From Phyllobates terribilis (lineage: Eukaryota), in the NCBI RefSeq assembly GCF_046119375.1, contig NW_027362762.1, forward strand, positions 779,092,001 to 779,156,000: a DNA stretch of 64,000 bases, written 5' to 3'. The notes beneath the pieces are model-generated. The model made no database searches. It was not told the DNA's origin and saw nothing but the letters and a program-made list of their open reading frames with translations. The position numbers and the translations under genes are program-made. The stretch's first letter is position 1. Each line of letters starts with the position of its first letter. Shown one piece after another: positions 13,447 to 57,896 of the stretch.

Positions 13447-16400
13447 TTAAAGGCGTTCCACGAGTTAAAGCAATTCTCGGTGAATAGAAAACTTATTGGA
13501 AAATGTCAGCATGAATAAATTCCTAAATACCTTTAGTTAGCAAATCTTGTTCCTTTTCCTCCTTTTGTCTAGAGAAGTAATCACTATAGAACATTAAAGT
13601 GGCTACTATCTTGTTACACTGACAGAAACCTGTCCTAAAATGCTAATAGGACAGGTTCTGTGAGCATGTGCAGTAAGAAGCTCCACCCCCTCCTTTCATG
13701 TGCAGTAAGATGTTTTCCCAGTGCTCAGTCTCATCTCACACTGGGGATACCAGGGGTGATAAGGTAACGAGAAGCTGCTCACACTGTTGTCTACCCGGTC
13801 TATCTTATCTCATATTGGATATACCAGTGGTGCTGAGAAAAGAAGAGGCCACTCACACTGCTGTCCACCCTACCTATCTGATCTAATACTAGAGATACCA
13901 GAGGTGCTGAGGTAAGGAAATGCTGCTTACACTGTTGTCCACTCTGTCTATCTGATCTAATACTGGATATACCAGTGTTGCTAAGTAGAGATGAGCGGTG
14001 TTCGACTAGAACTGTTCGCCAATCTCAAATTCGAGCTGTTTTGGGCGGTGTTCGAGTTGTTCGACGAACCCGAACGATTTGCAAAAAATTCGGCTGTTCG
14101 AGGTTATGTTCGATAACTGTTCGTGCACCAAAAGCGTGTCCTGCATGTCTGGCGCTATTTAGAGCACCAATCATGCAGGGATTGTCTGCCACTCACTGTA
14201 ATGCCACAGCCATGGTGGTTGTGGCATTACAGTGATTGCCCAAATCGATGGGAACAGTGCCAACAGTGAAACATGAAAAGCCGGCAATTCAGCAGCGGCA
14301 TACACCTGTACCCGACAATTTAGAACCGAAAGAATAGAGCTTCACACATAGATTAGATAGATATAAACATGTCAGTCACATATATACGAAGTACAGTGAA
14401 AGTGCTGCTTACTGTACTTGTCATTTAGCGTAAAGGATTTATCAAAAAAAATAATAGTGTTTTCATGCACCGTCTCTTTAAAAAAGCCGGCCGGCAATTC
14501 AGCATCTGTACACGACAATTTATAACAGACAGAATAGAGCTTCACACATAGATTAGATAGATAGAAACATGTCAGCCACATATATACGAAGTACAGTGAC
14601 AGTGTTGCTTACTGTACTTGTCATTTAGCGTAAAGGATTTATCAAAAAAAATAATAGTGTTTTCATGCACTGTCTCTTTAAAAAAGCCGGCCGGCAATTC
14701 AGCAGCGGTACCCGACAATTTATAACAGACAGAATAGAGCTTCACACATAGATTAGATAGATAGAAACATGTCAGTCACATATATATGAAGTACAGTGAT
14801 AGTGTTGGTTACTGTACTTGTCATTTAGTATTAAAATAAAGGATTTATTATTAAAAAAATTGGCGTGGGGTTCCCCTTAATTTTAGGCTCTAGCGGAGGT
14901 TAAGCAGACGGCTGGGGCAGATGTTTAATACCCACGGAGCTTCCCAGGCTACGAATATCAGCCCCCAGCTGAATACATAGCCTTTACTAGCTATTAAAAT
15001 GGGGGACCCCCCCCAAAAAATGACGTGGGGTCCCCCCTAATTTAATAGCTAGCAAAGGCTAGGCAGACAGCTGGGGGCTGATATTAATAGCCCAGGAAGG
15101 GAGCCATGAATATTGGCCCCCTCCCAGGCTAGAAACACCAGCCGTCAGCCGCCCCAGAAATGGCGCATTCATAGGATGCGCCAATTCTGGCACTTAGCCT
15201 CGCTCTTCCACGCTGCCCTGGTGCGGTGGCAGGGGGTAATAGGGTTGGGGTTGATGTCAGCTTATAATGCCAGCTGACATCAAGCCCAGGTTAGTAATGG
15301 AGAGGCGTCTATAAGACACCCCCATTACTAACCCCATAGTCAAAGTTAAAAAAAACACAAACACCCAGAATAAAGTCCTTTAATTGAAATAAAGACACAA
15401 TCCTTTATTGTTCTAAATTAAACCATACTTACCGTCACGCCCATTCCAGCTGAAGCCAACGATCTCCTGCAATAAAAGAAAAATAATAAAGCAACCTCAT
15501 CCTTACCTTTCCATGGTTCCCACGACAGCTTCAGCTCTGCTACATCGAGATGACAGGCTGGACCGCACTGAGAAGCGCAGGCTTGCTTGCGCTGCTCAGC
15601 GTCTCTCTGTGACGACATCCAGATGAGCCGAGTTCATGTCCAATGAACTCGGCTCACCTCATGCACGTCACTGACAGAGTGGGAAAATTCTCACGCTGAA
15701 GCGGTGAGTGCAGGAGAATTCTCCCACGCTGTCAGTGACGTGCATAAGGTGAGCTCATGTCCAATGAACTCAGCTCACCTCCTGCACGTTACTGACAGCG
15801 TGGGAGAATTCTCCTGCACTCAGCGCTTCAGCGTGAGAATTCTCCCACGCTGAAGCGCTGAGTGCAGGAGAATTTTCCCATGCTGTCAGTGACGTGCATA
15901 AGGTGAGCTCATGTCCAATGAACTCAGCTCACCTCCTGCACGTCACTGACAGCGTGGGAGAATTCTCCTGCACTCAGCGCTTCAGTGTGAGAATTCTCCC
16001 ACGCTGAAGCGCTGAGTGCAGGAGAATTTTCCCACGCTGTCAGTGACGTGCATGAGGTGAGCCGAGTTCATTGGACATTAACTCGGCTCATCTGGATGCC
16101 CTCACAGAGAGACACTGTGGAGCGCAAGCAAGCCTGCGCTTCTCAGTGTCTGCGGGATGACAGGCTGGATGGCAGCGTTCTGCTGCGGTCCAGCCTGTCA
16201 TCTCGATGTAGCAGAGCTGAAGCTGTCATGGGAACCATGGAAAGGTAAGGATGATGTTGCTTTATTATTTTTCTTTTATTTCAGGAGATCGTTGGCTTCA
16301 GCTGGAATGGGCGTGATGGTATGGTTTAATTTAGAACAATAAAGAATTGTGTGTTTATTTCAATTAAAGGACTTTTTTCTGGGTGTTGTGTTTTTTTTAA

Positions 16401-19400
16401 ATACTTTACTAGAAATTCATGGTGGTCATGTCTAATATTGGCGTGACCCCATGAATTTCGGGCTTAGGGCCAGCTGATAATGCCAAGCTGGCCCTAACCC
16501 CTTTATTACCCAGTGAGCCACCACATCAGGGCCCTGGATGAGTTGGGTACAGCGCCAGAAGATGGCGCTTCTATGAACGCGCCATTTTCCGGGGTGGCTG
16601 CGGACTGCAATTTGCAGCGGGGGTGGCCCAGAAAGCTTGGGCCTCCCTGCGCTGCGGATTCCAGCCCCCAGCTGCCTAGTTGTACCTGGCTGGACACAAA
16701 AACAGGGCGAAGCCCCACGTCAATTTTCTTTAAATTATTTCATGAAATAATTAAGAAAAATCAATTTTTTTTAAATTATTTCATGAATTTCCTGAAATAA
16801 TTTAAAAAAATTGAAGTGGGGCTTCGCACTATATTTGTGTCCAGCCAGGTACAGCAGGCAGGAACGGGCTGCCCCCATCCACCAGCTGCCTATTTGTACC
16901 TGGCCGGACACAACAATATAGGGAAGCCCTTTTTTTCTTAATTATTTCATGAATTTCATGAAATAATTAAAAAAAATTGAAGTGGGGCTTCGCACTATAT
17001 TTGTGTCCAGCCAGGTACAGCAGGCAGGAACGGGCTGCCCCCAACCACCAGCTGCCTATTTGTACCTGGCCGGACACAACAATATAGGGAAGGCCTTTTT
17101 TTCTTAATTATTTCATGAATTTCATGAAATAATTAAAAAAAAAGTACGTGGGGCTTCGCCCTATTTTTGTGTCCAGCCAGGTACAACTAGGCAGCTGGGG
17201 GCTGGAATCTGCAGCGCAGGGAGGCCCAAGCTTTCTGGGCCCCCCCCTGCTACAAATTGCAGTCCGCAGCCACCCCGGAAAATGGCGCGTTCATAGAAGC
17301 GCCATCTTCTGGCGCTGTACCCAACTCATCCAGGGCCCTGGTGCGGTGGCTCACTGGGTAATAAAGGGGTTAGGGCCAGCTTGGTATTATCAGCTGGCCC
17401 CAAGCCCAAAATTCATGGAGTCACGCCAGTATTAGACATGACCGCCATGAAATTCTAGTAAAGTATTTAAAAAAAACACAACACCCAGAATAAAGTCCTT
17501 TAATTGAAATAAAGACACAATTCTTTATTGTTCTAAATTAAACCATACTTACCATCACACCCATTCCAGCTGAAGCCAACGATCTCCTGCAATAAAAGAA
17601 AAATAATAAACCAACCTCATCCTTACCTTTCCATGGTTCCCACGACAGCTTCAGCTCTGCTACATCGAGATGACTGGCTGGACCGCAGCAGAACGCTGCC
17701 ATCCAGTCTGTCATCCCGCAGACACTGAGAAGCGCAGGCATGCTTGCGCTCCTCACTGTCTCGCTGTGACGACATCCAGATGAGCCGAGGTCATGTCCAA
17801 TGAACTCGGCTCACCTCATGCACGTCACTGACAGCGTGGGAAAATTCTCACGCTGAAGTGCTGAGTGCAGGAGAATTCTCCCACGCTGTCAGTGATGTGC
17901 ATGAGGTGAGCTCATGTCCAATGAAGTCAGCTCACCTCCTGCACGTCACTGACAGCGTGAGAAAATTCTCCTGCAATCAGCGCTTCAGCGTGAGAATTTT
18001 CCCACGCTGTCAGTGACGTGCATGAGGTGAGCCGAGTTCATTGGACATGAACTCGGCTCATCTGGATGTCGTCACAGAGAGACGCTGAGCAGCGCAAGCA
18101 AGCCTGCGCTTCTCAGTGTCTGCGGGATGACAGGCTGGATGGCAGCGTTCTGCTGCGGTCCAGCCTGTCATCTCGATGTAGCAGAGCTGAAGCTGTCGTG
18201 GGAACCATGGAAAGGTAAGGATGAGGTTGCTTTATTATTTTTCTTTTATTGCAGGAGATCGTTGGCTTCAGCTGGAATGGGCGTGATGGTAAGTATGGTT
18301 TAATTTAGAACAATAAAGGATTGTGTCTTTATTTCAATTAAAGGACTTTATTCTGGGTGTTTGTGTTTTTTTTAACTTTGACTATGGGGTTAGTAATGGG
18401 GGTGTCTTATAGACGCCTCTCCATTACTAACCTGGGCTTGATGTCAGCTGGCATTATAAGCTGACATCAACCCCAACCCTATTACCCCCTGCCACCGCAC
18501 CAGGGCAGCGTGGAAGAGCGAGGCTAAGTGCCAGAATTGGCGCATCTTATGAATGCGCCATTTCTGGGGCGGCTGACGGCTGGTGTTTCTAGCCTGGGAG
18601 GGGGCCAATATTCATGGCTCCCTTCCTGGGCTATTAATATCAGCCCCCAGCTGTCTGCCTAGCCTTTGCTAGCTATTAAATTAGGGGGGACCCCACGTCA
18701 TTTTTTTTGGGGGGTCCCCCATTTTAATAGCTAGTAAAGGCTATGTATTCAGCTGGGGGCTGATATTAGTAGCCTGGGAAGCTCCGTGGGTATTACCCCC
18801 TTCCCAGGCTTCAAACATCTGCCCCAGCCGTCTGCTTAACCTCCGCTAGAGCCTAAAATTAAGGGGAACCCCACGCCAATTTTTTTAATAATAAATCCTT
18901 TATTTTAATACTAAATGACAAGTACAGTAACCAACACTATCACTGTACTTCATATATATGTGACTGACATGTTTCTATCTATCTAATCTATGTGTGATGC
19001 TCTATCTTTCTGTTCTAAATTGTCGGGTACCGCTGCTGAATTGCCGGCCGGCTTTTTTAAAGAGACAGTGCATGAAAACACTATTATTTTTTTAAATAAA
19101 TCCTTTACACTAAATGACAAGTATAGTAAGCAACACTATCACTGTACTTCATATATATGTGACTGACATGTTTCTATCTATCTAATCTATGTGTGAAGCT
19201 CTATTCTTTCTGTTCTAAATTGTCGGGTACAGATGCTGAATTGCCGGCCGGCTTTTTTAAAGAGACGGTGCATGAAAACACTATTATTTTTTTAAATAAA
19301 TCCTTTACACTAAATGACAAGTATAGTAAGCAACACTGTCACTGTACTTATTATATATGTGACTGACATGTTTCTATCTATCTAATCTATGTGTGAAGCT

Positions 19401-20290
19401 CTATTCTTTCTGTTCTAAATTGTCGGGTACCGCTGCTGAATTGCCGCTGGCTTTTTTAAAGAGACGGTGCATGAAAACACTAATATTTTTTTTAATAAAT
19501 CCTTTACACTAAATGACAAGTGCAGTAACCAACACTGTCACTGTGCTTCTTATATGTGTGACTGACATGTTTCTATCTATCTAATCTATGTGTGATGCTC
19601 TATTCCTTCTTGTCTAAATTGTCGGGTACCGGTGTATGCCGCTGCTGAATTTGCCGGCCGGCTTTTTTAAAGAGAGTGTCTTCTGAGCAGTTTGTCAGCT
19701 TTTGGACACCTTTGCAGGTGTTTTCTATGTGTTTCTATGTGTTTTTGTTTGCCTGCCATTGGTTTTAACGGTGTTCGACGGTGTTCTAAGGTGTTCGACG
19801 AACAGTTCGACGAACAGTTCCTCGAACATCCCGGTGTTCGACTAACCGAACCGAACCCGAACACTACGGGGGTGGCTCAACACTATTGCTAAGTTAAAAT
19901 GAGGCTGCTCACACTGCTGTCCATCCTGTCTATCTGATTTAACACTGTAGATACTAGAGGTGCTAAAGTAAGAAGAGGCCACTCACACTGTTGTGCAATC
20001 TGATTTTCTGAATGTTCAGTGGCTCCTGTGAGATGAAAGTAACTTCTACCCAGTATCGGGCATCTATTAAGGCATCCCCAGGTTATAGCAGTGGAGCTTC
20101 CTACTGCACATGCTCACTGGAATCTGTCCTATTATCATTCTAGAACAGGTTTCTCTAGTGTAACAAGCCATTTTAATGTACAATAGTGATTTCCTCCCTA
20201 GGACAAAACAAGTGCGATTTGCTAATTAAAGGTATTTAGGAATTTATAATGACATTTCTGTTATTTATTATTTGTTCTATTCCTAAAAAA
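13447..20290. mobile_element. Old MITE-like element with ~190-bp inverted arms and an internal 74-bp tandem repeat, split by the hAT foldback insertion
   Basis: ~13495-13690 is the reverse complement of ~20085-20260. 74-bp units (ctcacactg.. at 13778, 13852, 13926, then 19908, 19982) continue across the insertion. Confidence 0.6.
13986..19885. mobile_element. 5.9-kb non-coding hAT-ended foldback element made of nested palindromes
   Basis: Termini TAGAGATGAGCG / GGCTCAACACTA; perfect 8-bp TSD TTGCTAAG (13978-13985, 19886-19893); GTTCGA subterminal motif clusters at both ends; no transposase ORF. Confidence 0.9.
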
Positions 20291-24405: not shown

Positions 24406-24616
24406 NNNNNNNNNNNNNNNNNNNNNNNNNNNNNNNNNNNNNNNNNNNNNNNNNNNNNNNNNNNNNNNNNNNNNNNNNNNNNNNNNNNNNNNNNNNNNNN
24501 NNNNNNNNNNNNNNNNNNNNNNNNNNNNNNNNNNNNNNNNNNNNNNNNNNNNNNNNNNNNNNNNNNNNNNNNNNNNNNNNNNNNNNNNNNNNNNNNNNNN
24601 NNNNNNNNNNNNNNNN
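24406..24616. other. Assembly gap (211 N)
   Basis: Run of N. Confidence 1.
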
Positions 24617-26419
24617 ATCTATTTCTCCATTGGACATCTTGTATCCGTGTACCTAGTCTGAAATTGTTTTCTTTGGATTCTATTAGCTTGATACTTTATA
24701 ATTTGTGCAGCTGCCAAACCTAAGTATCTCTCGGTATTACTGACTCTGTTTAACTGAGCCGCCGACCCCTATTTCGCACCAACTGTCAATGAACAGATGG
24801 CCGCATGTGCACAACTCTCTGTTCATTTCTATGGGAGTTTTGAAAGTAGAGAAGCAAGTGTGTTTAGCTCTATTTAGAACTCCTATGGAAGTGAATGGAA
24901 TATGCTGTGAATGGACACCCACCTCTCCATTCTGAGCAGATACCAGATGGGGGTTGGCCATTAATTTTAAAGTATTAGTCTCTTTCATGGTTTACCCTAC
25001 ACAGCTCTCTACTCTTTGGCATTTCCTATGCCACTGCTCACTCCAGTCGGGGACTAAAGTAAGATTTATGGCTTGGCACACGGGAGCACACGCCACTCGT
25101 CAGACACTCCAGGTTCATGAAGAGGTGTGCTTCTTGGCCACAGTGTAACAATGGGGAGGACACAGTGCTTGTCCAAATGTGGCTCCTTTAAACAGCTTAT
25201 TGCCCATGAATTTTAATAAACTGGAAATCTGCTTAAGCGCCAAAGTATTCAGAAAAATAAAGGTAAAAAATAGCTTGAGCAGAAGTTGTGGGACCAGCAA
25301 TTTATTGGTGATCAAAACAGAACTACAAAAATAAAAAAAAGTCTTATTGCTGGAAATATTTGTCAAGACCAAAAGCAACAGAGGAATAGTGTATAATACG
25401 ACATACAGTAAGCATGCTAGGAATGTATCGGGCAGCACCAACACTATTTTCATTTATATTACTCTTCTTTCTTTCAGAGTTGTATTTTCCTAATATTTAA
25501 ATTAACTTTAATCTCCATTAAATCTGGTCAGATCCAGCAATGAGTATGAGAATCCATTATTGTAAAACTGTAAAATAAACTCTAATTGCAATATCAAGCA
25601 AAATAAATATAACATTGAAGCCTTTGTTTAATTGGAAACTGGAAAACACAATGTTACACATAGAGATTGGCCGCTTAAAGCAATATCATGCGCATGTGTA
25701 TCATTGTGGAGGGCTCCATATGTGGAGAGGGCTAAGGTGCTGAGCTTTGTCCACACGTGGTTAATGCTACATTACATATTAGTGATGAGCGAGCACTAAA
25801 ATGCTTGGGTACTCGTTGCTCGGGTCGAGCAAATTGGAATACTCGGGTGCTTCTATGGGAAACTCGAGCATTTTTCAGGCGGCTCCCCCCGGCGGTCTGC
25901 AGAGGGCCTAAAAATTGCCCAAATCGATGGGAACAGTGCTCAAATGACATGGGAACAGCATGGGGAAGACCCCTGGAAGCATCTCTGACTCCCAGATCAC
26001 TGCTGTCAGCAACGTAGTCAGAGTATTATGCCACTTTTACGGACTCACAATAAAACATACAAAAACGAAACCAAAATGGATTTTCCTGGGAAATATGTTA
26101 AGGAACATCCTTTCCAGGGTAATGACTTGTATATAAGGCAAAATAAATAAACAAAAACAAAAATACTCCTTCACAACTTGGGCTATGTTCACACGTAGCG
26201 TTTTTGATGCGTTTCTGCACTTTTGAATTGCTTTCAACCAAGACAAATGCATTCACCAGGAAATGTCATTTTAGCATTTTACAACCTTATCTGGTCATGT
26301 GGTGTGTGACACATCATCAGACACAAGCATACAGTGCTGAAAAGACATGGGAACAGAATGGGGAAGACCTCTGGAAGCATCTCTGACTCCCAGGTCACTG
26401 CCTAAAAGTGTGCCCATCA

Positions 26420-31201: not shown

Positions 31202-34200
31202 ATGGTGTCGGTTCAGGATTTGGCTCAACGCCTGCAGGGACTCTCTTTGGAGGTGGCCGAGCTCCAACAACACGTGAGTAGCTGTTCTGGAGCGCATTTT
31301 GTGGAGCCAAAGGTACGATTGCCTGATTAATTTTTTGGTGAACAACAAGATTTTTTTTCCTTTAAAAATGCTTGTTTATTGTATTTTCGTTTGAGACCCA
31401 GATCCTCTGGTGATGAATCACAGCGCATAGGGTTCATAATGTCACTTTTGCGCAAAGAACCTCAGGGATGGGCCTTTTCTCTCCAACCTAGTGATCCGTG
31501 CTTTAGATCAGTGGATAGTTTTTTTTTCTGTTTTGGGGTTGTTGTATGATGATCCTGATCGTGTCTCATCAGCTGAGACGGAATTGAGACATTTGAGGCA
31601 GGGATCAGGTAATGTGGAAAATTATTGTACTCACTTCCGTCGGTGGTCTGCTCAGGTGGGGTGGAACGATTCAGCTCTGAAAAGTTTGTTTCTTGCTGGG
31701 CTAGGTGAAAGGGTTAAGGATTTGCTGATTGCTTATCCCACACCTGGAAACTTGCAGGAGGCAATGCAATTAGCTATACGGGTGGACAGGAGACAGCGTG
31801 CAAGGGTTAATGAGAGTAAATCCTCTGCCATGTCAGCTCCGAGTCTTGAGAGGGTCTGTACTGACACTGGAGAGCCGATGGAGATTGGGAAGATGTCACC
31901 CCGCTCTCAGGAAAAAGACCGCAGGTTTTCTGGAGGTTTGTGCTTTTATTGCGGCAAATCTGACCATTTCATTAAGAACTGTGTGCTTCGTATGAACAAA
32001 GAAAAAAAAAAGGTCAGTTACACCCGTATAGCCTGTTTAAACACTAAGGGTGTATTTCTTTCTGCTACTACCGCAGCTCAGGAAGAATTAATTGAATTTT
32101 GGGTATTTGTGGATTGTGGTTCAACTCTGAATGTGATTGATGGGAGATTCTTGGAAAAACTTAATTTAAAACCCAAACCTTTGTCATCCCCTATTGCCGT
32201 GGTTTCTGTCGATGGCTCTCCCTTGAAATGTGTTACTCACAAGGTTTATGAATTTCCCCTCACTATTAATGGTATTCACCAAGAAAATTTGGATTTGGTG
32301 GTATTAAATAATTTGCCTTCTCCAGTAGTTTTGGGGTTGCCCTGGTTAAAATTGCACAATCCTGTACTGGATTGGTCTACCAATGAAATCAAGTCCTGGA
32401 GCCCTAAGTGTTATGACAAGTGTTGTAACGGGCGCATTGCTGCTGTGGATAAAGAGGAATTACCTGTACCTATTCAGGATTTTTGGAAAGTTTTTTCTGA
32501 GGAGGAGTCGCAAATTTTGCCTCCCCATAGAGACTACGATTGTACCATTGAATTTGTCCCTGGAGCGACTCTTCCTAAAAGTCGTTTATTTAATCTGACT
32601 ATTCCTGAGAGAAAGGCTTTGGAGGAATACATACAGACGAGCTTGGCCGCCGGTCATATCAGACCCTCTAAGTCACCTGTGGCTGTTGGATTTTATTTTG
32701 TTAAAAAAAAGGACGGCGGTTTATGTCCTTGTTTGGACTTTCGCGAGATTAATAAAATTACTGTATGCAATCCCTACCCACTGCCATTGATTCCTGATTT
32801 GTTTAACCAATTAGTGGGGGCCAAGTGGTTCTCTAAAATTGATCTCCGGGGGGCATACATTTTGTTGCGCATGAAGGAGGGTGATGAATGGAAGACTGCT
32901 TTTAACACTCCTGTGGGTCATTTTGAGAATTTGGTTATGCCTTTTGGTCTTACCATTGCACCAGTATTTTTTCAGAATCTTATTAATGACATCCTTAGAC
33001 CTTTGATCGGCAAAAATGTGGTTGTGTATTTGGATGACATTTTGATTTATTCGCCTGACCTGGAGTCTCATTGGCGGAGCGTACGTGAGGTATTGTAGTT
33101 ATTGATTGACAATTCGCTTTTTGCTAAGCTGGAGAAATGTGAGTTCGCTGTACAGAGAATTATTTTTTTGGGCTACATTATCTCCAGCGAGGGCTTTGAG
33201 ATGGACCCGGTGAAAGTTCAAGCTGTGCAGGAATGGCCTAGGCCTATTGGTTTGAAATCGATACAGAGGTTTTTGGGTTTCGCCAATTATTACAGAAAAT
33301 TCATTAAAAATTTTTCTATTATTGTTAAACCACTGACCGATCTCACCAGGAAAGGTTCTAATATGGTTCAGTGGACTGCTGAGGCCATTGAAGCTTTTGT
33401 GTGTCTAAAGGAGAGGCTCAGCTCTGCCCCCATCCTTATGCAGCCTGATGTGACTAAGCCGTTTTTGGTTGAGGTTGATGCTTCTTCTGTGGGGGTCGGT
33501 GCGGTGTTGTCTCAGGAAAACAAGGATGGAGTACATCCCTGTGCCTTTTTTTCAAAAAAATTTTCTGAGACTGAACTTAATTACGATATTTGTAATCGGG
33601 AATTGCTGGCTATTAAACTCGCATTTGAACACTGGCGTCATCTCTTGGAAGGTGCTGATTTTCCAATTCAGGTTTTCACTGATCATAAAAATCTGATCTA
33701 TCTTGATGCTGCCAAGCGCTTGAATGCCCGTCAGGCTAGGTGGGCACTTTTTTTTTCGCTGTTTAATTTTTCTGTTACTTACATCCCGGGTACCAAGAAT
33801 GTTAAAGCTGATGCTTTGTCTCGCAGCTTTTCTCCCATGGTCGGTGCTGAGGAGGAGGAGAGCATTTTACAAGAAGGTGTTGAGATTGCTGCATTGGACT
33901 CCGTTTTGGAAGATGAGATTCTTAAAGCACAGGAGAATGCCCCATCTAACACTCCCCATGGGAGGTTGTTTGTGCCTAGGACCTTTAGGAGAGATTTGTT
34001 TGTTGAGTGTCATGAGTCTCGGTTGGCAGGTCATCCTGGAATTTCTGAGACCAAGAGACTTGTGGGTCGCAGTTTTTGGTGGCCTGGATGGCAGAAGGAG
34101 GTCATTAAGTGGGTGCGTCAATGTACTGTGTGTGCTAGATCTAAGTCTTCACAAACTCCTGCTGCGGGGTTGCTTTGCCCTCTGGAGGTTCCTAGTGCAC

Positions 34201-35270
34201 CTTGACACATCTGGCTATGGACTTTATTACTGACCTTCCCCCCCTCTGAGGGTTTCACGGTCTTCTGGGTGGTCGTGGACCGTTTTAGCAAGATGTGTCA
34301 CTTGGTTCCCTTCATCAAACTGCCCTGCGCTAAGACACTCGCTAAGGCCTTTGTCAAGGAGATTGTCAGACTCCATGGTGTTCCTACTGACATTGTTTCT
34401 GATAGGGGACCTCAGTTCGTGGCTCATTTTTGGCGTGCCTTTTGTGACAGGTTGGGAGTTCATTTGTCATTTTCATCTGGATATCATCCTGAGTCTAATG
34501 GCCAGACAGAAAGGAAGAACCAGGATGTTGAGCAGTTCTTGCGTTGTTTTGTGGCAGACAATCAAGAGGGGTGGTCTGAGTTTCTGCCGCTTGCTGAATT
34601 TGCTCTTAACAACCATACATCCTCTTCTGCTGGGTGTTCGCCTTTTTTTTGCTGTTCTGGGAGACATCCGTCTTTTGGGTCATTCTCCAAATTGGTATCG
34701 GCTGTGCCTGAGGAGGAGAGTTTTTCCGGTGATTTGGAAAGAGTTTGGACGGATGTGCGTGGCAATCTTCAGGAGGCTAACAAAAAATCTAAGAGGTACT
34801 TTGACAGGAAACGTCAAGAGGTTTTGTTTACGGTTGGTGACATGGTTTGGTTGTCCTCTAAGAATCTGCGGTTGAGGATTCCTTCTAAAAAATTGGGTCC
34901 CAAGTTTGTAGGGCCCTTTAAGGTGCTTCAGGTAGTTAACCAATCTGCTGTTAGGTTGGAGGTACCTACCTCCTGGAAGATTAATCCGGTGTTTCATATT
35001 TCTCTATTGAAAAAAGCTTATGCATCAGATAGAGACGCCACTGCCACTGTTCCTACGGTGGTGGAGGAAGGGGAATATGAAATTTCCCGCATCCTTAATT
35101 CTAGACGGTATGGAGGGAGTTTGCAGTATCTCGTCGCTTGGAAGGGTTTCGGTCCCGAGGATAACTCATGGGTGAGGGCAGATGATGTTTCTGCTTCCAG
35201 ACTTGTCAGAGCGTTTCACAAGAGCTTTCCTGATAAGCCTGGGCCTAGGGGATCCGGAGGATCCTCATAG
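31202..35270 (+). pseudogene. Chromovirus gag-pol (CA, CCHC knuckle, PR, RT, RH, IN, chromodomain) with stops at 31328 and 33096 and frameshifts at ~31520 and ~34205
   Basis: CFYCGKSDHFIKNC; FVDCGS; KIDLRGAY..YLDDILIYS; EVDASSVGVGAVL..ELLAIK; HESRLAGHPG..CTVC; VVDRFSK..SDRGPQF..NGQTERKNQ; EYEISRILNSR..QYLVAWKGFGPEDNSW. Confidence 0.95.
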
Positions 35271-36392: not shown

Positions 36393-39300
36393 TTATGTTA
36401 CTCTGTTATCATTCGGTGGTGTTGAGAAGTCTGGCCCAATCCAGCCCTTGTTCATTTTTATAAGAGTCAGCCTGTCAGCATTTTCAGTTGACAGGCGGAT
36501 GCGCTTATCAGTTATAATTCCACCAGTGGCACTAAAAACCCGCTCTGATAAAACGCTGGTGGCAGGGCAGGCCAGAATCTCCAAGGCATAGAGACAGTTC
36601 ATTCCACGTATCTAGCTTGCATACCCAATAATTATAAGGCACAGAGGAATCACGGAGGACGTTGGTACGGTCGGCAAGGTACTTCCTCAGCATCTTCCCA
36701 AACTTTGCACTCCTTCTGAGAGTACCCCGCGCCTCAGGGCCTGTGCGATGGGAGGGTCTGAGAAAACTCTCCCAGAACTTTGACAGTGTTCCCCTGCCTC
36801 TGCTGGATTGAAGTTGTGTCTCTCTCGCCTGTACTCCTTGGTTGTCCAACAAAGTGTGCCCTCTGCCGCCAGCGTTTTCAGATGGGAATTTTTTTAATAG
36901 TTCCGCAACAAGGGCCTTCTGGTACTGCCCCATTTTTGTACACCTGTCCACCTCATGAATAAGAGATATAAAGTTCTCCTTGTAGCGTGGTTCTAGAAGT
37001 GTCACCAACCAGTAATGACTGTCACCCCAAATTTTGAGAACGCGAGGGTCATGCGAAAGGCAGCGTAACATAAACTCAGCCATGCGTGCCAGACTATTAA
37101 CAGGCAAGACTTCCGTGTCCTCACCAAGAGGATGACTGACCATGCTCTCCTCCTCCTCCTCTCTGTCCTCTGTCCATTCACGCTAAACAGATGGTATGAC
37201 ATCTGTGCAGGTAGTACCGTCTATAGTGCATGAAACTAGCTCCTGTCCTTCCTCCTCCTCCTCCTCTTCCTCATTGTCACCCAATCCACGTTGGGATGAG
37301 ATGAGGCTTGGCTGTGTGTAATCATCCTGTATGGTTCCTTGCTCCATCTCATCGTGCTCCACCTGCCATGCATCCTCTTTGATTGTGAGCAGAGAGCATT
37401 TCAGAAGACAGAGAAGCGGGATGGTAACGCTAATTATGCTGTCATCGCCGCTCACCATCTTGGTGCAATCCTCAAAGTTTTGGAGGATGATACTTATGTC
37501 TGACATCCATGTCCACTCCTGAGGTCTTATGTGTGGAGTCTGAACTGAACACCGACGGCCTTGTTGATGCTGGTACTCAACAACTGCCCTCTTCTGCTCA
37601 CAAATCCTTCCCAACATCTGCAGTGTAGAGTTCCAACGTGTGGGGACATCACACACCAGTCTGTGAGCCAGAAGCTGCAAACGCTGCTGAAACACTGCAA
37701 GGGCGGTGGAAGCTGTAGCTAACTTTCTAAAATGGGCACACAGGCGGCGTACTTTAACAAGCAGATCCGGCAGCTCCAGGTAGGATTTGAGAAACCGCTG
37801 AACCACGAGGTTAAGCACATGGGCCAGGCATGGTACGTGTATGAGCTCACCTCGCCTCAGAGCTGCCACCAGGTTCCGGCCATTGTCACACACGACCATG
37901 CCTGGCTGTAGGTTCAGCGATGTGAGCCACAGATCTGCCTGCTCTTTCAGAGCTGTCCACAACTCTTCAGCATTGTGCGTTTTTTCACCTAAGCATATTA
38001 GCTTCAGCACAGCCTGTTGCCGCTTGGCCGAGACAGTGCTGCAGTGCTTCCAGCTTGTGACTGATGTGGTCATTTCGGAGATGCAGGCTGAAGAGGAGTA
38101 GGAGGCTGAGGAGGATGAGCTGCAGGAGCTGTAGACCGTGGGGGCAACCCTGATTGACCTAGGGTCCGCAATCCTTGGCGTCGGGAGGACGTGTTCCGTT
38201 CCAAGGTCCGACTGAGTCCCGGCTTCCACTATGTTAACCCATTGTGCCGTCAGCGAGATGTACCATCCCTGCCCACAAGCACTTGTCCACGTGTCCGTGG
38301 TTAGGTGGACTTTACCAGTAACTGCATTGTTGAGAGCACGACTAATGTTTTGGGACACGTGCTTGTGTAATGCGGGGACGGCACACCGGGAGAAATAGTG
38401 GTGGCTGGGGACAGAGTAGTAGTGTGGCCTGTGGGGTGTTGGCTGCATATTTGCGCTTGCGTTCCAAGGACTGGGGTATGGACAACTGAACGCTGCGCTG
38501 GGACAAGGACATGGACGTGCTTCCTGATGCTGCTACTTGAGAGTGTGCAACGACAGGTGCAGGTCAGGAGGCGTCTTTGCATGCACCATGGACAGGGGAT
38601 TGGCTTGCATGCACAACAGCGGAAGAAGCAATGGTGCCACCCGCAGACACTGTTCCTGGACCCTGGGGTTCGGCCCACAAAGTCGGGTGCTTTGCTGCCA
38701 TGTGCCTGATCATGCTGGTGGTGGTCAGGCTGGTTGTTTTGCCACCCCTGCTGATGCTGGCCTGGCAGGTGGTGCAAATGGCCTTTTTGGGGTTATCAGC
38801 AGAGTCTTTAAAAAACAACCAGACTCGGGAAGACCTAACATTTGTACTGGCATCTTCCTTCGTGTTGGTGTTACGGGAAACGGTTGCCTGCCTTCTGTCT
38901 GCGGCCACCACACTGCTTCTTCCTGCCTGTAGGGATGGTCTGCCTCCCTCCCCCTGTGTGCTCCTGTCCTCGCTCTGCATGTCCTCCTGCCAGGTTCGGT
39001 CAGTTACTATATCATCCACGACATCATCTTCCACTTCTGCACCCTGGTCCTCCTCCTGACTTTCTGGCAATTGTATCTCATCATCGTCCACCTCTTGTGA
39101 CACTTTCCCACCGTCGCCTTCGTGTGACTGTGGCTGCTCAAATATTTGGGCATCGCTACAGGTGATCTCCTCTTGCCCCGCTTCAAGTGAACCGGGCGAG
39201 AGGCCTGAATCTATAAATGGTAAAGTGAACAGCTCTTCAGAGTGTCCAAGTGTGGGATCAATTGTCTCTGGGTACTCGGCATGGTGGGAGGAAGAAGGAT

Positions 39301-39590
39301 CAGGGTGAGGAATATGCGGTCCAGACTCACGGCTACTGAGACTTGACTGTGTGGAAGACAGGGTGGTGGTGGTGGAGGCTAAGTGACTGGAAGCGTTATC
39401 CGCTATCCAACCAACAACCTTTTGACACTGCTCTGGGTTCAATAGTGGTGTGCTGAGGTCCCCTAGAAATTGGGACAGGCATGTCAGGCGAGAAGATGTG
39501 GATGTTTGTTGTGGCACAATTTCGGCTTGCCCACGGCCTTGTCCTCGGCCTCTGCATGCACCATTACGATCACGTCCAGTTCCCCGTCCC
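36393..39590 (-). pseudogene. hAT transposase (BED finger, DDE, dimerisation domain), copy 1; start codon deleted, several frameshifts
   Basis: VWLFFK..CTTC..SMIRHMAAKHP; VHLTTDTWTS; VVCDNGRN; PCLAHVLNLVV; PTRWNST; LSERVFSATGGIITDKR. Confidence 0.93.
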
Positions 39591-42228
39591 TGATAGAGAA
39601 AACAGAGTTTTAAATACCTGACCTGACCTGTTGGTATGTAGTTTGAACAGCAAACTGCGGTGAATTGCTTCAATGACACACTAAAGGAAATTTTTAATGG
39701 AGGCCAGAAATGGCAGTATTTTCTGACAATGTATATGTGATCCGTTTGACGGAGAAACCACAGTTTTAAATAGCTGGATTTCTAGCGCTCTAATATGGAA
39801 AGGACCTGGCTGTATTCTGCAGTGCCAACAACCAAATGGTGCAGAAAAAATGGTGTTCTCTGGATGGCTTTTTAAGCAATTAATGAGGATTAAGATCCAA
39901 AGAAAAGTATTCCTGGCCCCTGAGACCTGGGCCTTTGTATAGAAATATCTAACAGCAGCAGAAGGCAGAATTGGAATGGAGCCTCTTGTGCTATATGCAC
40001 TGCAGTCTGCTATATACACTGCCTGCCTATACACCCTGCCTGCCTGATATCTCTGCAGATGGATTAGTCCTCAGAAAGACTGTTTGTTAAGATGGATATG
40101 TGTAATGTATGGTTTTTCTCCCTACACTACCTAATACACAAGCAAATCTGTCCCTGACACAGCAGCACCTCTCCCAAAACAAACAAATGGCGCAGAAAAA
40201 CGGTGTTCTATGGATTGCTTTTTAAGCAAATTATGAGGATTAAGATCCAAAGAAAAGTATTCCTGGCCCCTGAGACCTGGGCCTTTGTATAGAAATATCT
40301 AACAGCAGCAGAAGGCAGAATTGGAATGGAGCCTCTTGTGCTATATGCACTGCAGTCTGCTATATACACCACCTGCCTATACACCCTGCCTGCCTGATAT
40401 CTCTGCAGATGGATTAGTCCTCAGAAGGACTGTTTGTTTAGATGGATATGTGTAATGTACGGTTTTTCTCCCTACACTACCTAATACACGATCAAATCTC
40501 TCCCTGACGCAGCAGCAGCTCTCCCTACACTGTCTGATCCGGAGTGACTGTGACGAGCATGGCAGTGCCAGGTCTGATATAGACCTGATGACGCTGTGCG
40601 GCCAGCCAATCACTGCCCACAACCAACATGGCTATGGCATTACAGTGCATGGCAGGCAATCCCTGCATGTTCATTGGCTCTCTAAAGTGCGCCAAACATG
40701 CAGGGAGGGGACCCTAGTTCCCTCCCGAGCAACCCGGAAATACTTGGCGAGCGCCGAGCATCTCGAGCAGTGAGATGCTTGGCAAGCACTGAGCAGTAGC
40801 GAGCATGCTCGCTCATCACTAATAGCTATGTCTAACTGCAGCGGCCCATAGCTGAGCTCCGATCACTGCTATAAACCATTTGAAAGTCACCCCCAAAACA
40901 CTAAGTAAACCACTTATACAAGGATATAGGGGACTTAGCGCCTACAGAAATACCTATAAAATTGCTTTGAGTTGTTTAGTTGCCTTAAAAAAACTATTTA
41001 TTTGGTATACAAATGAGGTATATTCCATGCGCCCTTAGCGTGACCATTGCACCATTATGCGCCCTTAATTTGCCTAACGAGCATCGTTATGACTTGATTG
41101 ACAGCACTCAAGTGAATGCTGTCTGAACTCAATGAGCGGCTTTCCATGGACATTCCAGCCACCCTATAATGTGGATATACGTGCAGGTGGTGGTCAGTGA
41201 GAGTGGTTGCCATTTGGCACAGACCTCATGGGAATGGGACATTATCCCCATGTTTGCACTGAGCACTTTATCACTATCTCCACTGCCACATCTGCGGAGC
41301 AGTTTGCACGAGACACCTTACTGAGAATACCAAAAAGATTCATCTAAGCTAAGTCTCTCTTATTAAGCATTCATATTATATTATCTGAATTTATAGGGTC
41401 TGTGGCTCCTGATGAGCCGATTAGCAGGAGAAACTCGCCCGCATGGAGCGATACATACCTGCATTTGTATTTGAACTTAGTGGTGTAGTTGTGGGGTTGG
41501 TCTATTTGCATTTCTGATCTTGTCCCTATGAATAGGAGGGTCCAAGGACAACTCCATACTTTATCTCTTGACTTTCTGGCTGACTAGTGAATCTTTTTAT
41601 GCTTATTGTACTTGAAGATTGGTCTATTGTATATATTGGTATAAAGTGACATCTATTTTCTGGTTTGGTGAGGGAAGCAGGAATATTCCATGTGATCATT
41701 ATTGTTACTAATACACATATACTTGTTCTGTATTTACAGCCAGATTGAGATCTATACACAGTATTATTGTTTGATGATTGATATCCTCTTGAGTATCTGG
41801 GCCATTAAGATAACTGACTGTTAGGAAATGAATACCCATTAATTTCCTATTTTTTGATTTACCAAACTGCAGGTACAGTGGTGGTGGCCCATTAGTCTTG
41901 GGGATTGAATGGTGATTACCCTCTTGCATCCCCTTACACTGATAATTGACTTCCACCACTCTCACCTAATCAGGGACTTATAGGGTGAGCTGACGAGGAG
42001 CGGGGGCGCCATTTGCGTTCAAGAGGGTGCCAACCTCCACTGTGAGGTAGGGACAGATTAGGGGTCAGCTTAGGGCATTGCCCCTTCCCCACTTTATGAG
42101 AATCTTTTTGGGCTGAGAATACTGTACGGCCTTTTAACCATTTTTGGTGTTTTTTGGGGGTTTTTTTTTGAGGGTCAGTTACAATTTAATTTTTAATGAT
42201 ACTAATAAACATAAAATTTTAGGTGTAC

Positions 42229-47725: not shown

Positions 47726-48024
47726 TAGTCTTGAGCAAAAGTGCTTGCTACTTGAGTTTGCATCGGGTACTCGGGTATGCACCAAGTATCGCGGGTGCTC
47801 GTGTCCCTGCCCCGCATGTTTCACAGTTATTAGACACCCAAAAAAAAATATGCAAGGATCGCTCGTGCATGGCAGGCAATCCCCGTCAGTTTTCTTTGGC
47901 TGTATAACAGCCGTGAAACATATGGGGCGGAGACTCGTGCATGTCACTCGAGCACCCGCGATACTCAGTGCATACCCGAGCACCCGATGCAAACTCAAGT
48001 AACGAGCACTAGCGCTCAACACTA
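47726..48024. mobile_element. Short hAT-type MITE
   Basis: TAGTCTTGAGC ... CGCTCAACACTA with palindromic CTCGGG/CCCGAG-rich arms; 8-bp TSD not conserved. Confidence 0.7.
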
Positions 48025-54600: not shown

Positions 54601-57027
54601 CCGGCTCACAGATTGGTGTGTGATGTCCCCACGCGTTGGAACTCTACACTGCAGATGTTGGGAAGGATTTGTGAGCAGAAGAGGGCAGTTGTTGAGTACC
54701 AGCATCAACAAGGCCGTCGGTATTCAGTTCCACACATAAGACCTCAGGAGTGGATATGGATGTCAGACATATGTACCATCCTCCAAAACTTTGAGGACTC
54801 CACCAAGATGGTGAGCGTCGATGACGCCATAATTAGCATCAGCATCCCGTTTCTCTGTCTTCTGAAACGCTCTCTGCTCACAATCAAAGAGGATGCATTG
54901 CAGGCGGAGCACGATGAGATGGAGCAAGGTACCATACAGGGTGATTACACACAGCCAAGCTTCATCTCATCCCAATGTGGATTAGGTGACAATGAGGACG
55001 AGGAGGAGGAGGAGGAAGGACAGGAGCTAGTTTCATGCACTATAGACGGTACTACCTGCACAACTGTCATACCGTCTGTTCAGCGCGGATGGCCAAAGGA
55101 CAGAAAGGAGGAGGAGGAGGAGAGCATGGTCAGTCATCCTCTTGGTGAGGACACGGAAGTCTTGCCTGTTAGTAGTCTGGCACGCATGGCTGAGTATGTT
55201 ACGCTGCCTTTCCCATGACCCTCGCATTCTCAAAATTTTGGGTGACAGTCATTACTGGTTGGTGACACTTCTAGACCCACGCTACAAGGAGAACTTTATA
55301 TCTCTTATTCCTGAGGCGGAGAGGTGTACAAAAATGGGGCAGTACCAGAAGGACCTTGTTGCGGAACTATTAAAAAATTTCCCATCTGAAAACGCTGGCG
55401 GGAGAGGGCACACTTCGTTGAACAACCAAGGAGTACAGGCGAGAGAGACACAACTTCAATCCAGCAGAGGCAGGGGAACACTGTCAAAGTTCTGGGAGAG
55501 TTTTCTCAGACCCTCCCATCGCACAGGCCCTGAGGCGCGGGGTACTCTCAGAAGAAGTGCAAAGTTTGGGAAGATGCTGAGGGAGTACCTTGCCGACCGT
55601 ACCAACATCCTCCGTGATTCCTCTGTGCCTTATAATTATTGGGTATCCAAGCTGGATACGTGGAATGAACTGGCTCTCTATGCCTAGGAGGTCCTGGCCT
55701 GCTCTGCCGCCAGCGTTTTATCAGAGCGGGTATTTAGTGCCGCTGGTGGAATTATAACTGATAAGCGCATCCGCTTGTCAACTGAAAATGCTGACAGGCT
55801 GACTCTTATAAAAATGAACAAGGGCTGGATTGGGCCAGACTTCTCAACACCACCAAATGATAGCAGCGTAACATAAACTCAAATCCAGTGTCTTTTCTTG
55901 GGAGGTGTATTCCAATGCACCTTTTCACACCCACACATGGGTATACGCTTCCTGATTTTGTCTATTTGCTCTTGTCCTCCTCCTTCTCCTCATCCTCCAC
56001 CACCATATCACCAGGGTCACCGTGGTCCGTGATGCAACACCCACATAATTCTTTTAAAGGGTGCTTATGATGCCCGTAAAAAAAAAAATTTATACAGTAT
56101 GTTCATGTATACCCCCCAGGGGTAAATGTTTGTCAGCCCATAGTGCATGGGCATTACAAGTATAGGAGGCCTGCTCCTTTCTAATGGGAACATTTTTTTA
56201 TGAGGCCCTTCTCCACATCTCTTCCAAGGGGCATTGAAGTGCCTCCAAATTTTTGCTAGCCCCTGCATTCACTGCATAGGCCAACACTATGGGAGACTCT
56301 CTCCTTTCTAATGGGAATTTGTCGTTACTCTGGCCCTCCTCTATGTGTCTTTAAATTCTTAGTGGGGTTTTTCCCAAATTTTGCCAGCCCTTGCAGTCAC
56401 AGCATGGCCATTACCACTATAGGAGACCCGCTCCTTTATAATGGGAACATTTTTTTTACTGAGACCCTCCTCTATGTCTCTTCAAAGGGGTATTGGGTTG
56501 CATCCAAATTTTTGGCAGCCCTTGCAGTCACTGGATACGCAATAACAGTATAGGAGACCAACTTGTTAATAATGGGAACAACAAAGCATAGTCGGCTGAT
56601 GGCTCTCTAACATTAGCTAGGGCCGACTGCTGGCCTTTTAAGAATAGTAAGGGCCGTCTGATGTTCCTATAAAAATAGGCTTTATGACTTTCAGAGTACC
56701 TCCATCATAAATAAAAAAGGATGTGTCTGATGATGGGTCACACACCACATTGCCAGATAAGGTTGTAAAATGTTAAAATGACATTTCTCGGTGAATGCAT
56801 TTGTCTTACAAAATAAAGTAAAAAAAACAAAACAATAGGATCTTTCTTTAGTATAAAAAACAGCGTCACCAATTTAACCTCAATGTAATCACATTGTTCA
56901 GCTCCTGCACCTCCTCCTCCATCTCCGAAATGATCACATCAGTCACAAGCTGACAGCATTGCAGCACTGCCTTGGCCAAGCGGCAACAGGCTGTGCTGAA
57001 GATAACATGCTTAATGCTTAACTGACA
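51646..57027 (+). mobile_element. hAT DNA transposon copy 2 (5' end to 3' region, cut by the Gypsy LTR)
   Basis: TAGTGATGAGCAAGCATGCTCGC terminus, homologous to the 40821 end; colinear with copy 1. Confidence 0.9.
52605..55876 (+). pseudogene. hAT transposase copy 2 (~1100 codons: RG-rich/acidic N-terminus, BED finger, DDE, dimerisation domain), disrupted
   Basis: MGKARGKGR..; CTTCQASIS..RHMAAKHP; TTDTWTS; VCDNG; CLAH; TRWNS; LDPRYK; SERVFS; stops at 53139 and 55684 plus frameshifts. Confidence 0.93.
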
Positions 57028-57877: not shown

Positions 57878-57896
57878 TGGCGTAGTCGGCAGGATT
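57878..57896 (+). promoter_or_regulatory. tRNA-Ser primer-binding site
   Basis: TGGCGTAGTCGGCAGGATT is the reverse complement of the vertebrate tRNA-Ser 3' end (..AATCCTGCCGACTACGCCA). Confidence 0.88.

What the first reader, a model, noticed from the sequence alone, without database searches (positions are those of the whole stretch)
13986..19885. 5.9-kb hAT-ended foldback element that folds into a three-armed cloverleaf of nested palindromes
Seen: hAT-type termini and a perfect 8-bp TSD show the whole block moved as one unit, yet it is non-coding. Its layout is T3-A-(B m B')-C-(d d)-C'-(B m B')-A'-T'4. T is a ~200-bp unit (3 copies at 14281-14850, 4 inverted copies at 18890-19665). A is 14850-15345 with A' at 18375-18890. 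The two B-m-B' hairpins lie at 15345-16395 and 17465-18370, and the central C-dd-C' hairpin at 16400-17465. The units d and m are themselves hairpins. As single-stranded DNA or RNA this gives a ~1.1-kb basal stem with three long arms. The left end shares blocks with the 5' end (51765-51870) and the 25915 region of the hAT family in this window, which suggests that family mobilises it. Inference: it arose by repeated fold-back template switching during gap repair. It resembles Foldback elements but has hAT ends and multi-level symmetry, and it would be a strong dsRNA source if transcribed.
Basis: partly seen in the sequence, partly recalled or inferred. Interest (0 to 1): 0.75.

Follow-up and report, generated by a model that had tools for sequence, protein, structure and literature searches.

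The report
Non-coding hAT transposon carrying nested palindromes
This is a real, protein-less cut-and-paste (hAT-type) jumping gene of a frog-type genome whose 5.4-kb inside is a palindrome containing smaller palindromes. It is a striking variant of known foldback-like transposons rather than a new kind of element, and this scan had already met the family elsewhere in the same genome.

Summary
Window 13986-19885 is a discrete 5,900-bp insertion with hAT-type ends (TAGAGATGAGCG / TAGTGTTGAGCC) and a perfect 8-bp duplication, TTGCTAAG. Removing the element plus one duplication restores the host's 74-bp tandem repeat in perfect register. It has no ORF over 95 aa and no Pfam hit.

Three parts of the interpretation need correcting.
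- The three-armed cloverleaf is not the preferred fold. The minimum-energy fold is one long hairpin, and the cloverleaf is about 1% less stable.
- The hAT family in the window is related and does encode Hermes-like transposase. Its subterminal motif is GCTCG, while this element has GTTCG, so it is not shown to be the mobiliser.
- Foldback origin is supported only in its order of events. 97 of 97 informative sites say the whole-element inverted duplication came last.

A roughly 0.9-kb tract is 99.3% identical between the arms, against about 95% on both sides (p=4e-9). That points to arm-to-arm conversion.

Short contigs from four runs in four studies, including a second species label, cover every part of the element many times. 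The family is therefore high-copy.

The scan found this family before on other DNA of this genome (s1-193827 and others). My verdict is a new variant of a known kind, of moderate interest.

The parts
13978..13985 (.). Left copy of the 8-bp target-site duplication, TTGCTAAG
   Evidence: Identical to 19886-19893. It fits the hAT target pattern nTnnnnAn. Excising the element plus one copy restores the 74-bp host repeat register.
13986..14133 (+). Left end: the 12-bp terminal repeat TAGAGATGAGCG followed by GTTCG/CGAAC subterminal motifs
   Evidence: 7 GTTCG and 2 CGAAC in 150 bp, no GCTCG. Many contigs in three runs leave the element right after 14133, so relatives share this end only (table 7). 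In X10, contigs reach the terminus from differing flanks (loose ends at 13984).
14140..14263 (+). Block shared with transposase-encoding hAT elements of the window; it includes a 15-bp-stem dyad at 14194-14234
   Evidence: BLAST gives 82-85% identity to 51764-51866 (+) and 40617-40704 (-), and 97% over 30 bp to 25914-25943. The sequences were read.
14281..14850 (+). T array: a 200-bp unit repeated in tandem (2.6 copies by TRF over 14306-14828)
   Evidence: TRF (14306-14828, 95% matches). It sits where the window's hAT at 40821(-) has its own 350-bp x 2 array, between the dyad block and the BED ORF.
14850..15345 (+). A: the outer arm segment, with its own small hairpin at 14940-15099
   Evidence: Its inner half is homologous to C/C' at about 60%.
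15346..16400 (.). Left B-m-B' hairpin (1,055 bp). The m part is 154/121-bp units that are themselves inverted repeats. B lacks 37 nt that the other three arm copies have.
   Evidence: On its own it folds with 91% of bases paired at -564 kcal/mol with DNA parameters.
16401..17465 (.). Central C-d-d-C' hairpin; d is a 166-bp unit x 2.6, each unit a hairpin. The centre of the whole palindrome lies near 16952-16956.
17466..18374 (.). Right B-m-B' hairpin (909 bp; arms 17466-17912 and 17929-18375, 95% complementary, 16-nt loop)
18375..18890 (-). A', the inverted copy of A
18890..19665 (-). T' array: the inverted T units, 199 bp (3.6 copies by TRF over 18910-19631)
   Evidence: TRF; inverted matches. 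Contig joints that skip 200, 201 or 398 bp here show that copy number varies among family members (table 5).
19666..19885 (+). Right end, which is not a mirror of the left end. It has GTTCG/CGAAC motifs and the terminal repeat (reverse complement TAGTGTTGAGCC).
   Evidence: Relatives join from 19676 onwards (table 7). The same right-end type, TAGTGTTGAGCG, occurs at 48013-48024(-).
19886..19893 (.). Right copy of the target-site duplication, TTGCTAAG
14734..15650 (.). Left side of the near-identical arm tract (partner 18035-19005)
   Evidence: 6 mismatches in 916 aligned positions (99.3%), against 55 in 1,152 (about 95%) in the flanking arm segments on both sides. Fisher p=4e-9; profile.

Best explanation
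This is a non-autonomous hAT transposon. A transposase supplied in trans recognises the TAG(A/T)G termini and the GTTCG subterminal motifs, cuts the whole 5.9 kb out and pastes it in, leaving an 8-bp duplication. This copy landed in a 74-bp host tandem repeat.

Between two unlike ends (148 and about 210 bp shared with relatives) it carries 5.4 kb of non-coding cargo, which is a palindrome of palindromes. The left 865 bp keeps the order seen at the 5' end of transposase-encoding relatives: terminus, shared dyad block, tandem array.

The cargo was built in steps by inverted duplication:
1. Small hairpin units (m, d) arose first.
2. Then came a roughly 1.4-kb palindrome (A-inner, B, m, B', C).
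3. Last came an inverted duplication of the whole left half. That step automatically produced two copies of the inner hairpin.

After that, a roughly 0.9-kb tract of the two arms was made alike again by arm-to-arm conversion. Tandem units (T, m) and a 37-nt piece changed in number on one side.

Shown here: the insertion, the ends, the absence of coding, the layout, the order of the duplications, the near-identical tract, and the family's high copy number.

Inferred: the molecular route of the duplications (template switching during repair of excision gaps or at replication forks), whether conversion happened in this copy or in its source lineage, and any effect of the palindrome on transposition or silencing.
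For: - Discrete insertion: a perfect 8-bp duplication and restoration of the host 74-bp repeat register.
- hAT assignment: 8-bp duplication fitting nTnnnnAn. The terminal 12-mer matches 11 of 12 with window elements (25780, 40821, 51646). Two of those elements carry ORFs that match Hermes transposase (E=5e-5 and 2e-6), and one of them also carries zf-BED. They share a roughly 100-bp subterminal block with this element.
- Non-coding.
- Palindrome layout.
- Order of events: 97 informative sites group mirror partners and none support either alternative.
- Conversion tract: 99.3% against about 95%, p=4e-9.
- High copy, several individuals and a second species label: about 100,000 short contigs at 90% identity or more per DNA run, with all 30 bins covered in all four runs from four studies. 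Contigs reach the left terminus from differing flanks, and joints show T and m copy-number variants.
- Same order of parts (terminus, dyad block, tandem array) in a window hAT that has a BED ORF.
Against:
- The reads were contigs of about 100 bp. They cannot span a palindrome centre or confirm the long-range assembly at this locus.
- The autonomous partner with GTTCG motifs was not found.
- The near-identical tract could also reflect a later, separate duplication event rather than conversion.
Confidence: 0.85

Rival explanations
1. The palindrome is wholly or partly an assembly artefact, for example a fold-back chimera in long reads or a collapsed or mis-joined repeat. On this reading the real locus holds a simpler element.
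For: Long palindromes are hard to assemble. No read or contig laid here spans more than about 140 bp of the element (table 8), so the long-range structure at this locus was not independently confirmed.
Against: - The two ends are different in kind. 13986-14280 has no inverted match to 19666-19885, so this is not one half folded back.
- The arms differ by 0.7-5% in substitutions, by 18- and 37-nt indels, by T copy number (2.6 against 3.6) and by hairpin length (1,055 against 909 bp). A chimeric fold-back would give exact mirror copies.
- Every segment is present many times in four independent runs.
- Earlier scan notes report similar 4.5-7.9-kb copies at other loci. I could not check these.
Confidence: 0.05
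2. The structure is a pile-up of independent insertions. B-m-B' and C-dd-C' would be separate palindromic MITEs that jumped into a simple hAT derivative, not products of internal inverted duplication.
For: In the second species label (X18) the summed contig depth is several times higher over B/m and the ends than over T, A and d (table 2). That could mean B/m has a life of its own. Both B-m-B' units are bounded by A/T runs that could hide a short duplication.
Against: - Both B-m-B' units sit at the same place between homologous flanks. A-inner and C are about 60% alike, in inverted orientation on each side, so flank and hairpin were duplicated together.
- All 97 informative sites pair mirror partners across the whole element.
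- No part of the interior occurs elsewhere in the 64-kb window.
- No target duplication can be told apart from the palindrome itself.
Confidence: 0.08
3. The palindromic cargo is kept because it works. It might bring the two ends together and raise transposition, or it might be read from the retained 5' promoter-like region into a long hairpin RNA. Small RNAs from that hairpin could act on relatives that share the T leader array, much as the maize Mu killer locus acts on MuDR (the Mu killer comparison is from my own knowledge).
For: - The family is very abundant despite a length of 5.9 kb.
- The left end keeps the terminus, dyad block and tandem array order of transposase-encoding relatives.
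- The T array is present in both orientations.
- As RNA, about 90% of bases would pair.
Against: - No run on record as RNA holds it. The 'RNA?' runs are guesses and their contigs cannot show transcription.
- The T units carry no GTTCG motif.
- The most abundant relatives with the same ends diverge at 14133, before the T array.
- High copy number needs no function.
Confidence: 0.1

Closest known systems
Foldback-type DNA transposons (Drosophila FB, Galileo of the P superfamily, Tetris; PMC4079207, PMC4168063, PMC3688188)
   Same: They are non-coding copies of several kb made mostly of long inverted repeats that contain tandem repeats of about 200 bp. Repeat number varies between copies, and target duplications are 7-10 bp. 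[quoted passage not shown]
   Different: In those elements the long inverted repeats run out to the very termini and are the TIRs. Their tandem repeats may carry extra transposase-binding sites. Here the outer 295 bp and 220 bp are unlike each other, the palindrome is internal cargo, and the T units carry no GTTCG motif. Per PMC4079207 most foldbacks are assigned to Mutator and Galileo to P, whereas this one has hAT ends. Two further levels of palindrome inside each arm are not part of the classic description.
Non-autonomous hAT elements made by faulty repair, such as maize Ds deletion derivatives and 'double Ds' (from my own knowledge), and frog hAT-N families that carry captured DNA (hAT-N8_XT in PMC8277862)
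   Same: They have hAT ends and an 8-bp duplication, encode no transposase, and are mobilised in trans. Their interior has been remodelled by repair synthesis with template switching. Captured or rearranged cargo is amplified by later transposition.
   Different: Typical derivatives are simple internal deletions or carry foreign fragments. This one carries a 5.4-kb near-perfect palindrome with nested palindromes, is very abundant, and has no identified foreign gene fragment.
Large genomic palindromes kept alike by arm-to-arm gene conversion (sex-chromosome palindromes; PMC3403216, PMC7023750)
   Same: A tract of the two arms is far more alike than its surroundings (99.3% against about 95%), as expected from intrachromosomal conversion between inverted repeats.
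   Different: Those palindromes are tens of kb to Mb long, have spacers, carry genes and do not move. This one is a 5.4-kb, nearly spacer-free, mobile and non-coding unit.

Membership tests
hAT superfamily (non-autonomous member) | 8-bp target-site duplication, commonly fitting nTnnnnAn | tested here: met
   TTGCTAAG lies on both sides, with T at position 2 and A at position 7. The empty site can be reconstructed in register with the host 74-bp repeat.
hAT superfamily (non-autonomous member) | Short imperfect terminal inverted repeats beginning (C/T)A(G/A)NG | tested here: met
   TAGAGATGAGCG and TAGTGTTGAGCC match at 9 of 12 positions.
hAT superfamily (non-autonomous member) | Ends shared with elements that encode a hAT transposase (BED finger, RNase-H-like core as in Hermes) | tested here: inconclusive
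   Window elements with TAGTGATGAGCG termini (11 of 12 identical) and a shared roughly 100-bp block encode zf-BED (E=8e-8) and Hermes-like pieces (E=5e-5 and 2e-6). Their subterminal motif is GCTCG, not GTTCG. The true partner with GTTCG motifs was not found.
hAT superfamily (non-autonomous member) | Short subterminal repeats at both ends (transposase-binding sites) | tested here: met
   There are 9 GTTCG/CGAAC motifs in the left 150 bp and 10 in the right 150 bp. GTTCGA occurs only 3 more times in the other 58 kb. Binding itself was not tested.
Foldback elements in the classic sense (FB, Galileo, Tetris) | Very long terminal inverted repeats that reach the termini and make up most of the element | tested here: not met
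   The palindrome spans 14281-19665. The outer 295 bp and 220 bp have no inverted match apart from the 12-mer and the short motifs.
Foldback elements in the classic sense (FB, Galileo, Tetris) | Tandem repeats inside the inverted arms, variable in number | tested here: met
   T is 200 bp x 2.6 against 199 bp x 3.6. Joints that skip 200-398 bp in other copies show the variation.
MITE | Miniature size (usually under about 800 bp) | tested here: not met
   The element is 5,900 bp long.

The most novel reading that the evidence does not exclude
The nested palindrome is not just tolerated junk. It would be the reason for the family's success or its control. In this reading the retained 5' promoter-like block drives a hairpin RNA of more than 5 kb across an inverted copy of the hAT leader array (T/T'). 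That would make the element a mobile, self-amplifying trigger of small-RNA silencing against its own hAT relatives, and arm-to-arm conversion would keep the trigger double-stranded. A mobile 'killer' hairpin of this kind has not, to my knowledge, been described in a vertebrate.
Probability: 0.08. Interest if true: 0.8.

Novelty: new variant of a known kind. Interest (0 to 1): 0.42.

Why it matters
Long, nearly spacer-free palindromes are among the least stable DNA structures known in bacteria, yeast and mammals (PMC3855049, PMC4057610). Here a 5.4-kb palindrome is carried by a transposon that appears to be present in very many copies in a vertebrate genome, and it shows the expected footprints of palindrome dynamics: a conversion tract, one-sided loss of a small hairpin, and unit-number changes near the centres. 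The family is therefore a natural, many-fold replicated experiment on how a vertebrate genome tolerates, homogenises and erodes palindromes. It also adds hAT to the transposon lineages that have independently reached a foldback-like form. For genome annotation, such elements break short-read assemblies and can be mistaken for miRNA-like hairpins, as the sub-threshold Rfam hits show.

Tried and rejected
- Other copies in public collections. The exact 20-mer of the left terminus gave 0 hits in metagenome and viral contigs. A 16-mer gave 120 loci, but none shares anything else with the element (BLAST), so they are chance matches in microbial contigs.
- Earlier findings by sequence gave blanks.
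- Rfam gave only sub-threshold matches to many unrelated miRNA precursor families, on both strands. These are generic long-hairpin hits, not family membership.
- Pfam on the five longest ORFs gave nothing at E up to 0.1.
- Reads: all available runs were Logan contigs of about 100 bp. They could not test the long-range assembly, palindrome centres, strand, RNA level or true copy number. The joints that skip about 5.9 kb between the flanks are other units of the 74-bp host repeat, not a proven empty allele.
- Mirrored 'other letters' on the two arms (for example 14887/18852, 15040/18681, 15102/18619, 15169/18552) look like paired variants. About half of the contigs map to both arms, though, so I did not count them as independent evidence for conversion.
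- I considered a head-to-head pair of two elements ('double' element) and rejected it, because the two outer ends are of different types.
- The two poison-frog genome papers I searched mention hAT only in totals and never mention palindromes, foldback or MITEs. I did not verify the species of this window myself.
Full report
**What is there**

Window 13986-19885 is a 5,900-bp block. It starts TAGAGATGAGCG and ends with the reverse complement of TAGTGTTGAGCC (9 of 12 positions match). TTGCTAAG flanks it on both sides, at 13978-13985 and 19886-19893.

The block sits inside a host tandem repeat with a 74-bp period. When the block and one TTGCTAAG are removed, the units left and right of the junction line up in perfect register. 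That serves as an internal empty site and shows a clean insertion with an 8-bp duplication.

GTTCG/CGAAC motifs crowd both ends: 9 in the left 150 bp and 10 in the right 150 bp. GTTCGA occurs only three more times in the other 58 kb.

The longest ORF is 95 aa, and the five longest ORFs have no Pfam match at E up to 0.1. The element's CpG observed/expected ratio is 0.64, against 0.45 for the window. I read that as consistent with a fairly young repeat, though it is weak evidence.

**Layout**

| Part | Coordinates | Notes |
|---|---|---|
| T | 14281-14850 | 200 bp x 2.6 by TRF (14306-14828) |
| A | 14850-15345 | own small hairpin at 14940-15099 |
| left B-m-B' | 15346-16400 | 1,055 bp |
| C-d-d-C' | 16401-17465 | centre near 16952-16956 |
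| right B-m-B' | 17466-18374 | 909 bp |
| A' | 18375-18890 | inverted copy of A |
| T' | 18890-19665 | 199 bp x 3.6 by TRF (18910-19631) |

The m and d units are themselves inverted repeats of 81-89%.

- The palindrome is internal. The outer 295 bp on the left and 220 bp on the right have no inverted match beyond the 12-mer and the short motifs.
- The inner half of A and the C segment are homologous at about 60%, with conserved islands. Each B-m-B' is therefore the well-kept core of an older palindrome of about 1.4 kb (17238-18606 is self-inverted at 86%).

**Fold**

The whole 5,900 nt was folded with ViennaRNA.

| Parameters | Minimum-energy fold (one long hairpin) | Cloverleaf, evaluated on the full molecule | Difference |
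|---|---|---|---|
| DNA | -3090.0 kcal/mol | -3049.3 kcal/mol | 41 kcal/mol |
| RNA | -4871.6 kcal/mol | -4820.1 kcal/mol | 52 kcal/mol |

In the minimum-energy fold, 834 base pairs join the left B-m-B' to the right one, against 80 and 12 pairs inside them. The cloverleaf was assembled from the separately folded parts.

The two topologies therefore differ by about 1%. The cloverleaf is a legitimate alternative conformer, and local hairpins would probably form first for kinetic reasons (my inference). It is not the preferred fold and is not a special design. Any palindrome whose arms each contain a palindrome can adopt both forms.

**Superfamily and kin**

The window holds other ends of the same type: TAGTGATGAGCG at 25780(+) and 40821(-), TAGTGATGAGCA at 51646(+), and a right-end type TAGTGTTGAGCG at 48013-48024(-). 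Five matches were found against 0.93 expected.

Behind the 40821 end lie ORFs with a BED finger (E=7.7e-8) and a match to Hermes transposase (E=5e-5). Behind the 51646 end lies an ORF that also matches Hermes (E=2e-6).

These elements share a block with ours at the same distance from the terminus. 14140-14263 matches 51764-51866 and 40617-40704 at 82-85%, and 25914-25943 at 97% over 30 bp.

In the 40821 element the order is terminus, block, a 350-bp x 2 tandem array, then the BED ORF. In ours it is terminus, block, T array. The left 865 bp of this element therefore looks like the 5' end of an autonomous hAT, and T' is an inverted copy of that leader array.

The hAT assignment rests on three things: the 8-bp duplication fitting nTnnnnAn, the terminus, and this kinship.

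The window family uses GCTCG/CGAGC as its subterminal motif (8, 6 and 4 per 150 bp) and never GTTCG. Ours is the reverse. The window family is therefore related but is not shown to be the mobiliser.

**Order of events**

I aligned the four arm copies: A+B, the reverse complement of B'+C, C'+B, and the reverse complement of B'+A'. All 97 informative sites group A+B with B'+A', and B'+C with C'+B. These are the mirror partners across the whole element. No site supports either other grouping.

The inner hairpins are therefore older, and the whole-element inverted duplication came last. That event alone explains why there are two B-m-B' hairpins.

The route by which the duplications arose is not shown by anything here. 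Template switching during repair of an excision gap, as proposed for Ds derivatives, or at a stalled fork would both fit.

**Uneven arm identity**

Left against right arm identity is not uniform.

| Arm segment | Partner | Mismatches | Identity |
|---|---|---|---|
| 14734-15650 | 18035-19005 | 6 in 916 | 99.3% |
| T flank 14308-14733 | 19005-19430 | 22 in 426 | 94.8% |
| inner 16022-16748 | 17119-17849 | 33 in 726 | 95.5% |

Fisher p=4e-9 for the tract against the two flanks together. A single duplication would leave even divergence. A tract of about 0.9 kb that is younger than both of its neighbours is best read as arm-to-arm conversion.

I cannot tell from this window whether it happened in this copy or in its source lineage. 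An earlier follow-up on other copies (s1-217963) concluded that such tracts were inherited from source lineages.

One-sided changes sit where slippage is expected:
- a 37-nt hairpin-forming piece is missing from the left B only;
- an 18-nt indel lies in A/A';
- the m and T arrays differ in unit number.

**Abundance and spread**

Twenty public runs from five studies hold the stretch or a part of it. I laid four runs from four studies, all kept as contigs.
- About 115,000 and 100,000 contigs of roughly 100 bp matched at 90% identity or more in the two DNA runs.
- All 30 bins were covered in all four runs.
- The fourth run carries a second species label, and half of its matching contigs are at least 99% alike.
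- Contigs leave the element after 14133 and enter it at 19676 with a consistent different sequence in three runs. Relatives therefore share just these ends.
- In X10, five contigs reach the left terminus from differing flanks.
- Joints that skip 198-398 bp show T and m unit-number variants in other copies.

These data show a high-copy, structurally variable family. They cannot give a copy number, confirm the long-range assembly or show transcription.

**Artefact question**

I rate an assembly artefact as unlikely. The ends are of different kinds, and the arms differ in substitutions, indels and unit numbers. Every part exists many times in independent data. No long read was available, so this remains an argument rather than a direct test.

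**Relation to earlier work**

This scan has met the family before on other DNA of the same genome:
- s1-193827: 5,913 letters, described as having a '5.4-kb palindrome';
- s1-217963: three copies of 5-6 kb;
- s1-204928, s1-238367, s1-225815 and s1-196866.

Sizes and descriptions match mine, but look-ups by sequence were blank, so I could not confirm identity.

The two poison-frog genome papers I searched do not mention palindromic or foldback hAT elements. The 'poison-frog-type' label comes from earlier notes and was not checked here.

The closest described elements are the Drosophila foldback-type transposons FB, Galileo and Tetris. They share long inverted repeats with roughly 200-bp tandem units and variable structure. 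They differ in that their inverted repeats are the termini and their superfamilies are Mutator or P.

**Verdict**

This is a new variant of a known kind, already seen by this scan elsewhere in the genome. Its interest is moderate: it is a natural, replicated case of a long mobile palindrome in a vertebrate, with a measurable conversion tract. It is not a new mechanism.

Noticed in passing
reads laid on window 13940-19930 (tables 5 and 5c): joint 19885 -> 13982: In both DNA runs (two studies), contigs of depth about 410 join the right terminus to the left terminus of the family with 8 bp between them (CTCA plus TAAG, which fits nTnnnnAn). This suggests head-to-tail element pairs sharing one target site that are themselves multi-copy, or joined-end circles. 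It is not present at this locus.
   Followed up: no
window 13690-13985 and 19894-20010: The host sequence is a 74-bp tandem repeat of about 5 units at roughly 79% identity. Many contigs in the reads match its units, so it is itself a dispersed or satellite repeat. Its origin is unknown.
   Followed up: partly
window 14194-14234, 51816-51856 and 40630-40670(-): A dyad (a perfect 15-bp stem, CACTGTAATGCCACA / TGTGGCATTACAGTG, in this element) lies about 200 bp inside the 5' end of three hAT elements with different subterminal motifs. It is less perfect in the other two. It may be a regulatory or binding site conserved across hAT families of this genome.
   Followed up: partly
window 36532-40821 (-) and 51646-55218 (+): Two hAT elements with TAGTGATGAGC termini carry BED and Hermes-like ORFs. 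The first is split over three ORFs (broken or spliced) and has a 350-bp x 2 tandem array between its dyad block and the BED ORF.
   Followed up: partly
window 47780-48024 (-): A hAT right end (TAGTGTTGAGCG) with CGAGC motifs. Its 8-bp flank (GTCGACAT) does not match the flank of the left end at 25780 (TTACATAT), so its partner end is unclear.
   Followed up: no
window 57136-63803 (+) and 31491-35270 (+): Long ORFs, some with reverse transcriptase, RNase H and integrase domains (Ty3/gypsy-type retroelements), fill much of the rest of the window. No host gene was seen.
   Followed up: no
window 24406-24616: A run of 211 N (assembly gap or masked). I left it untouched.
   Followed up: no
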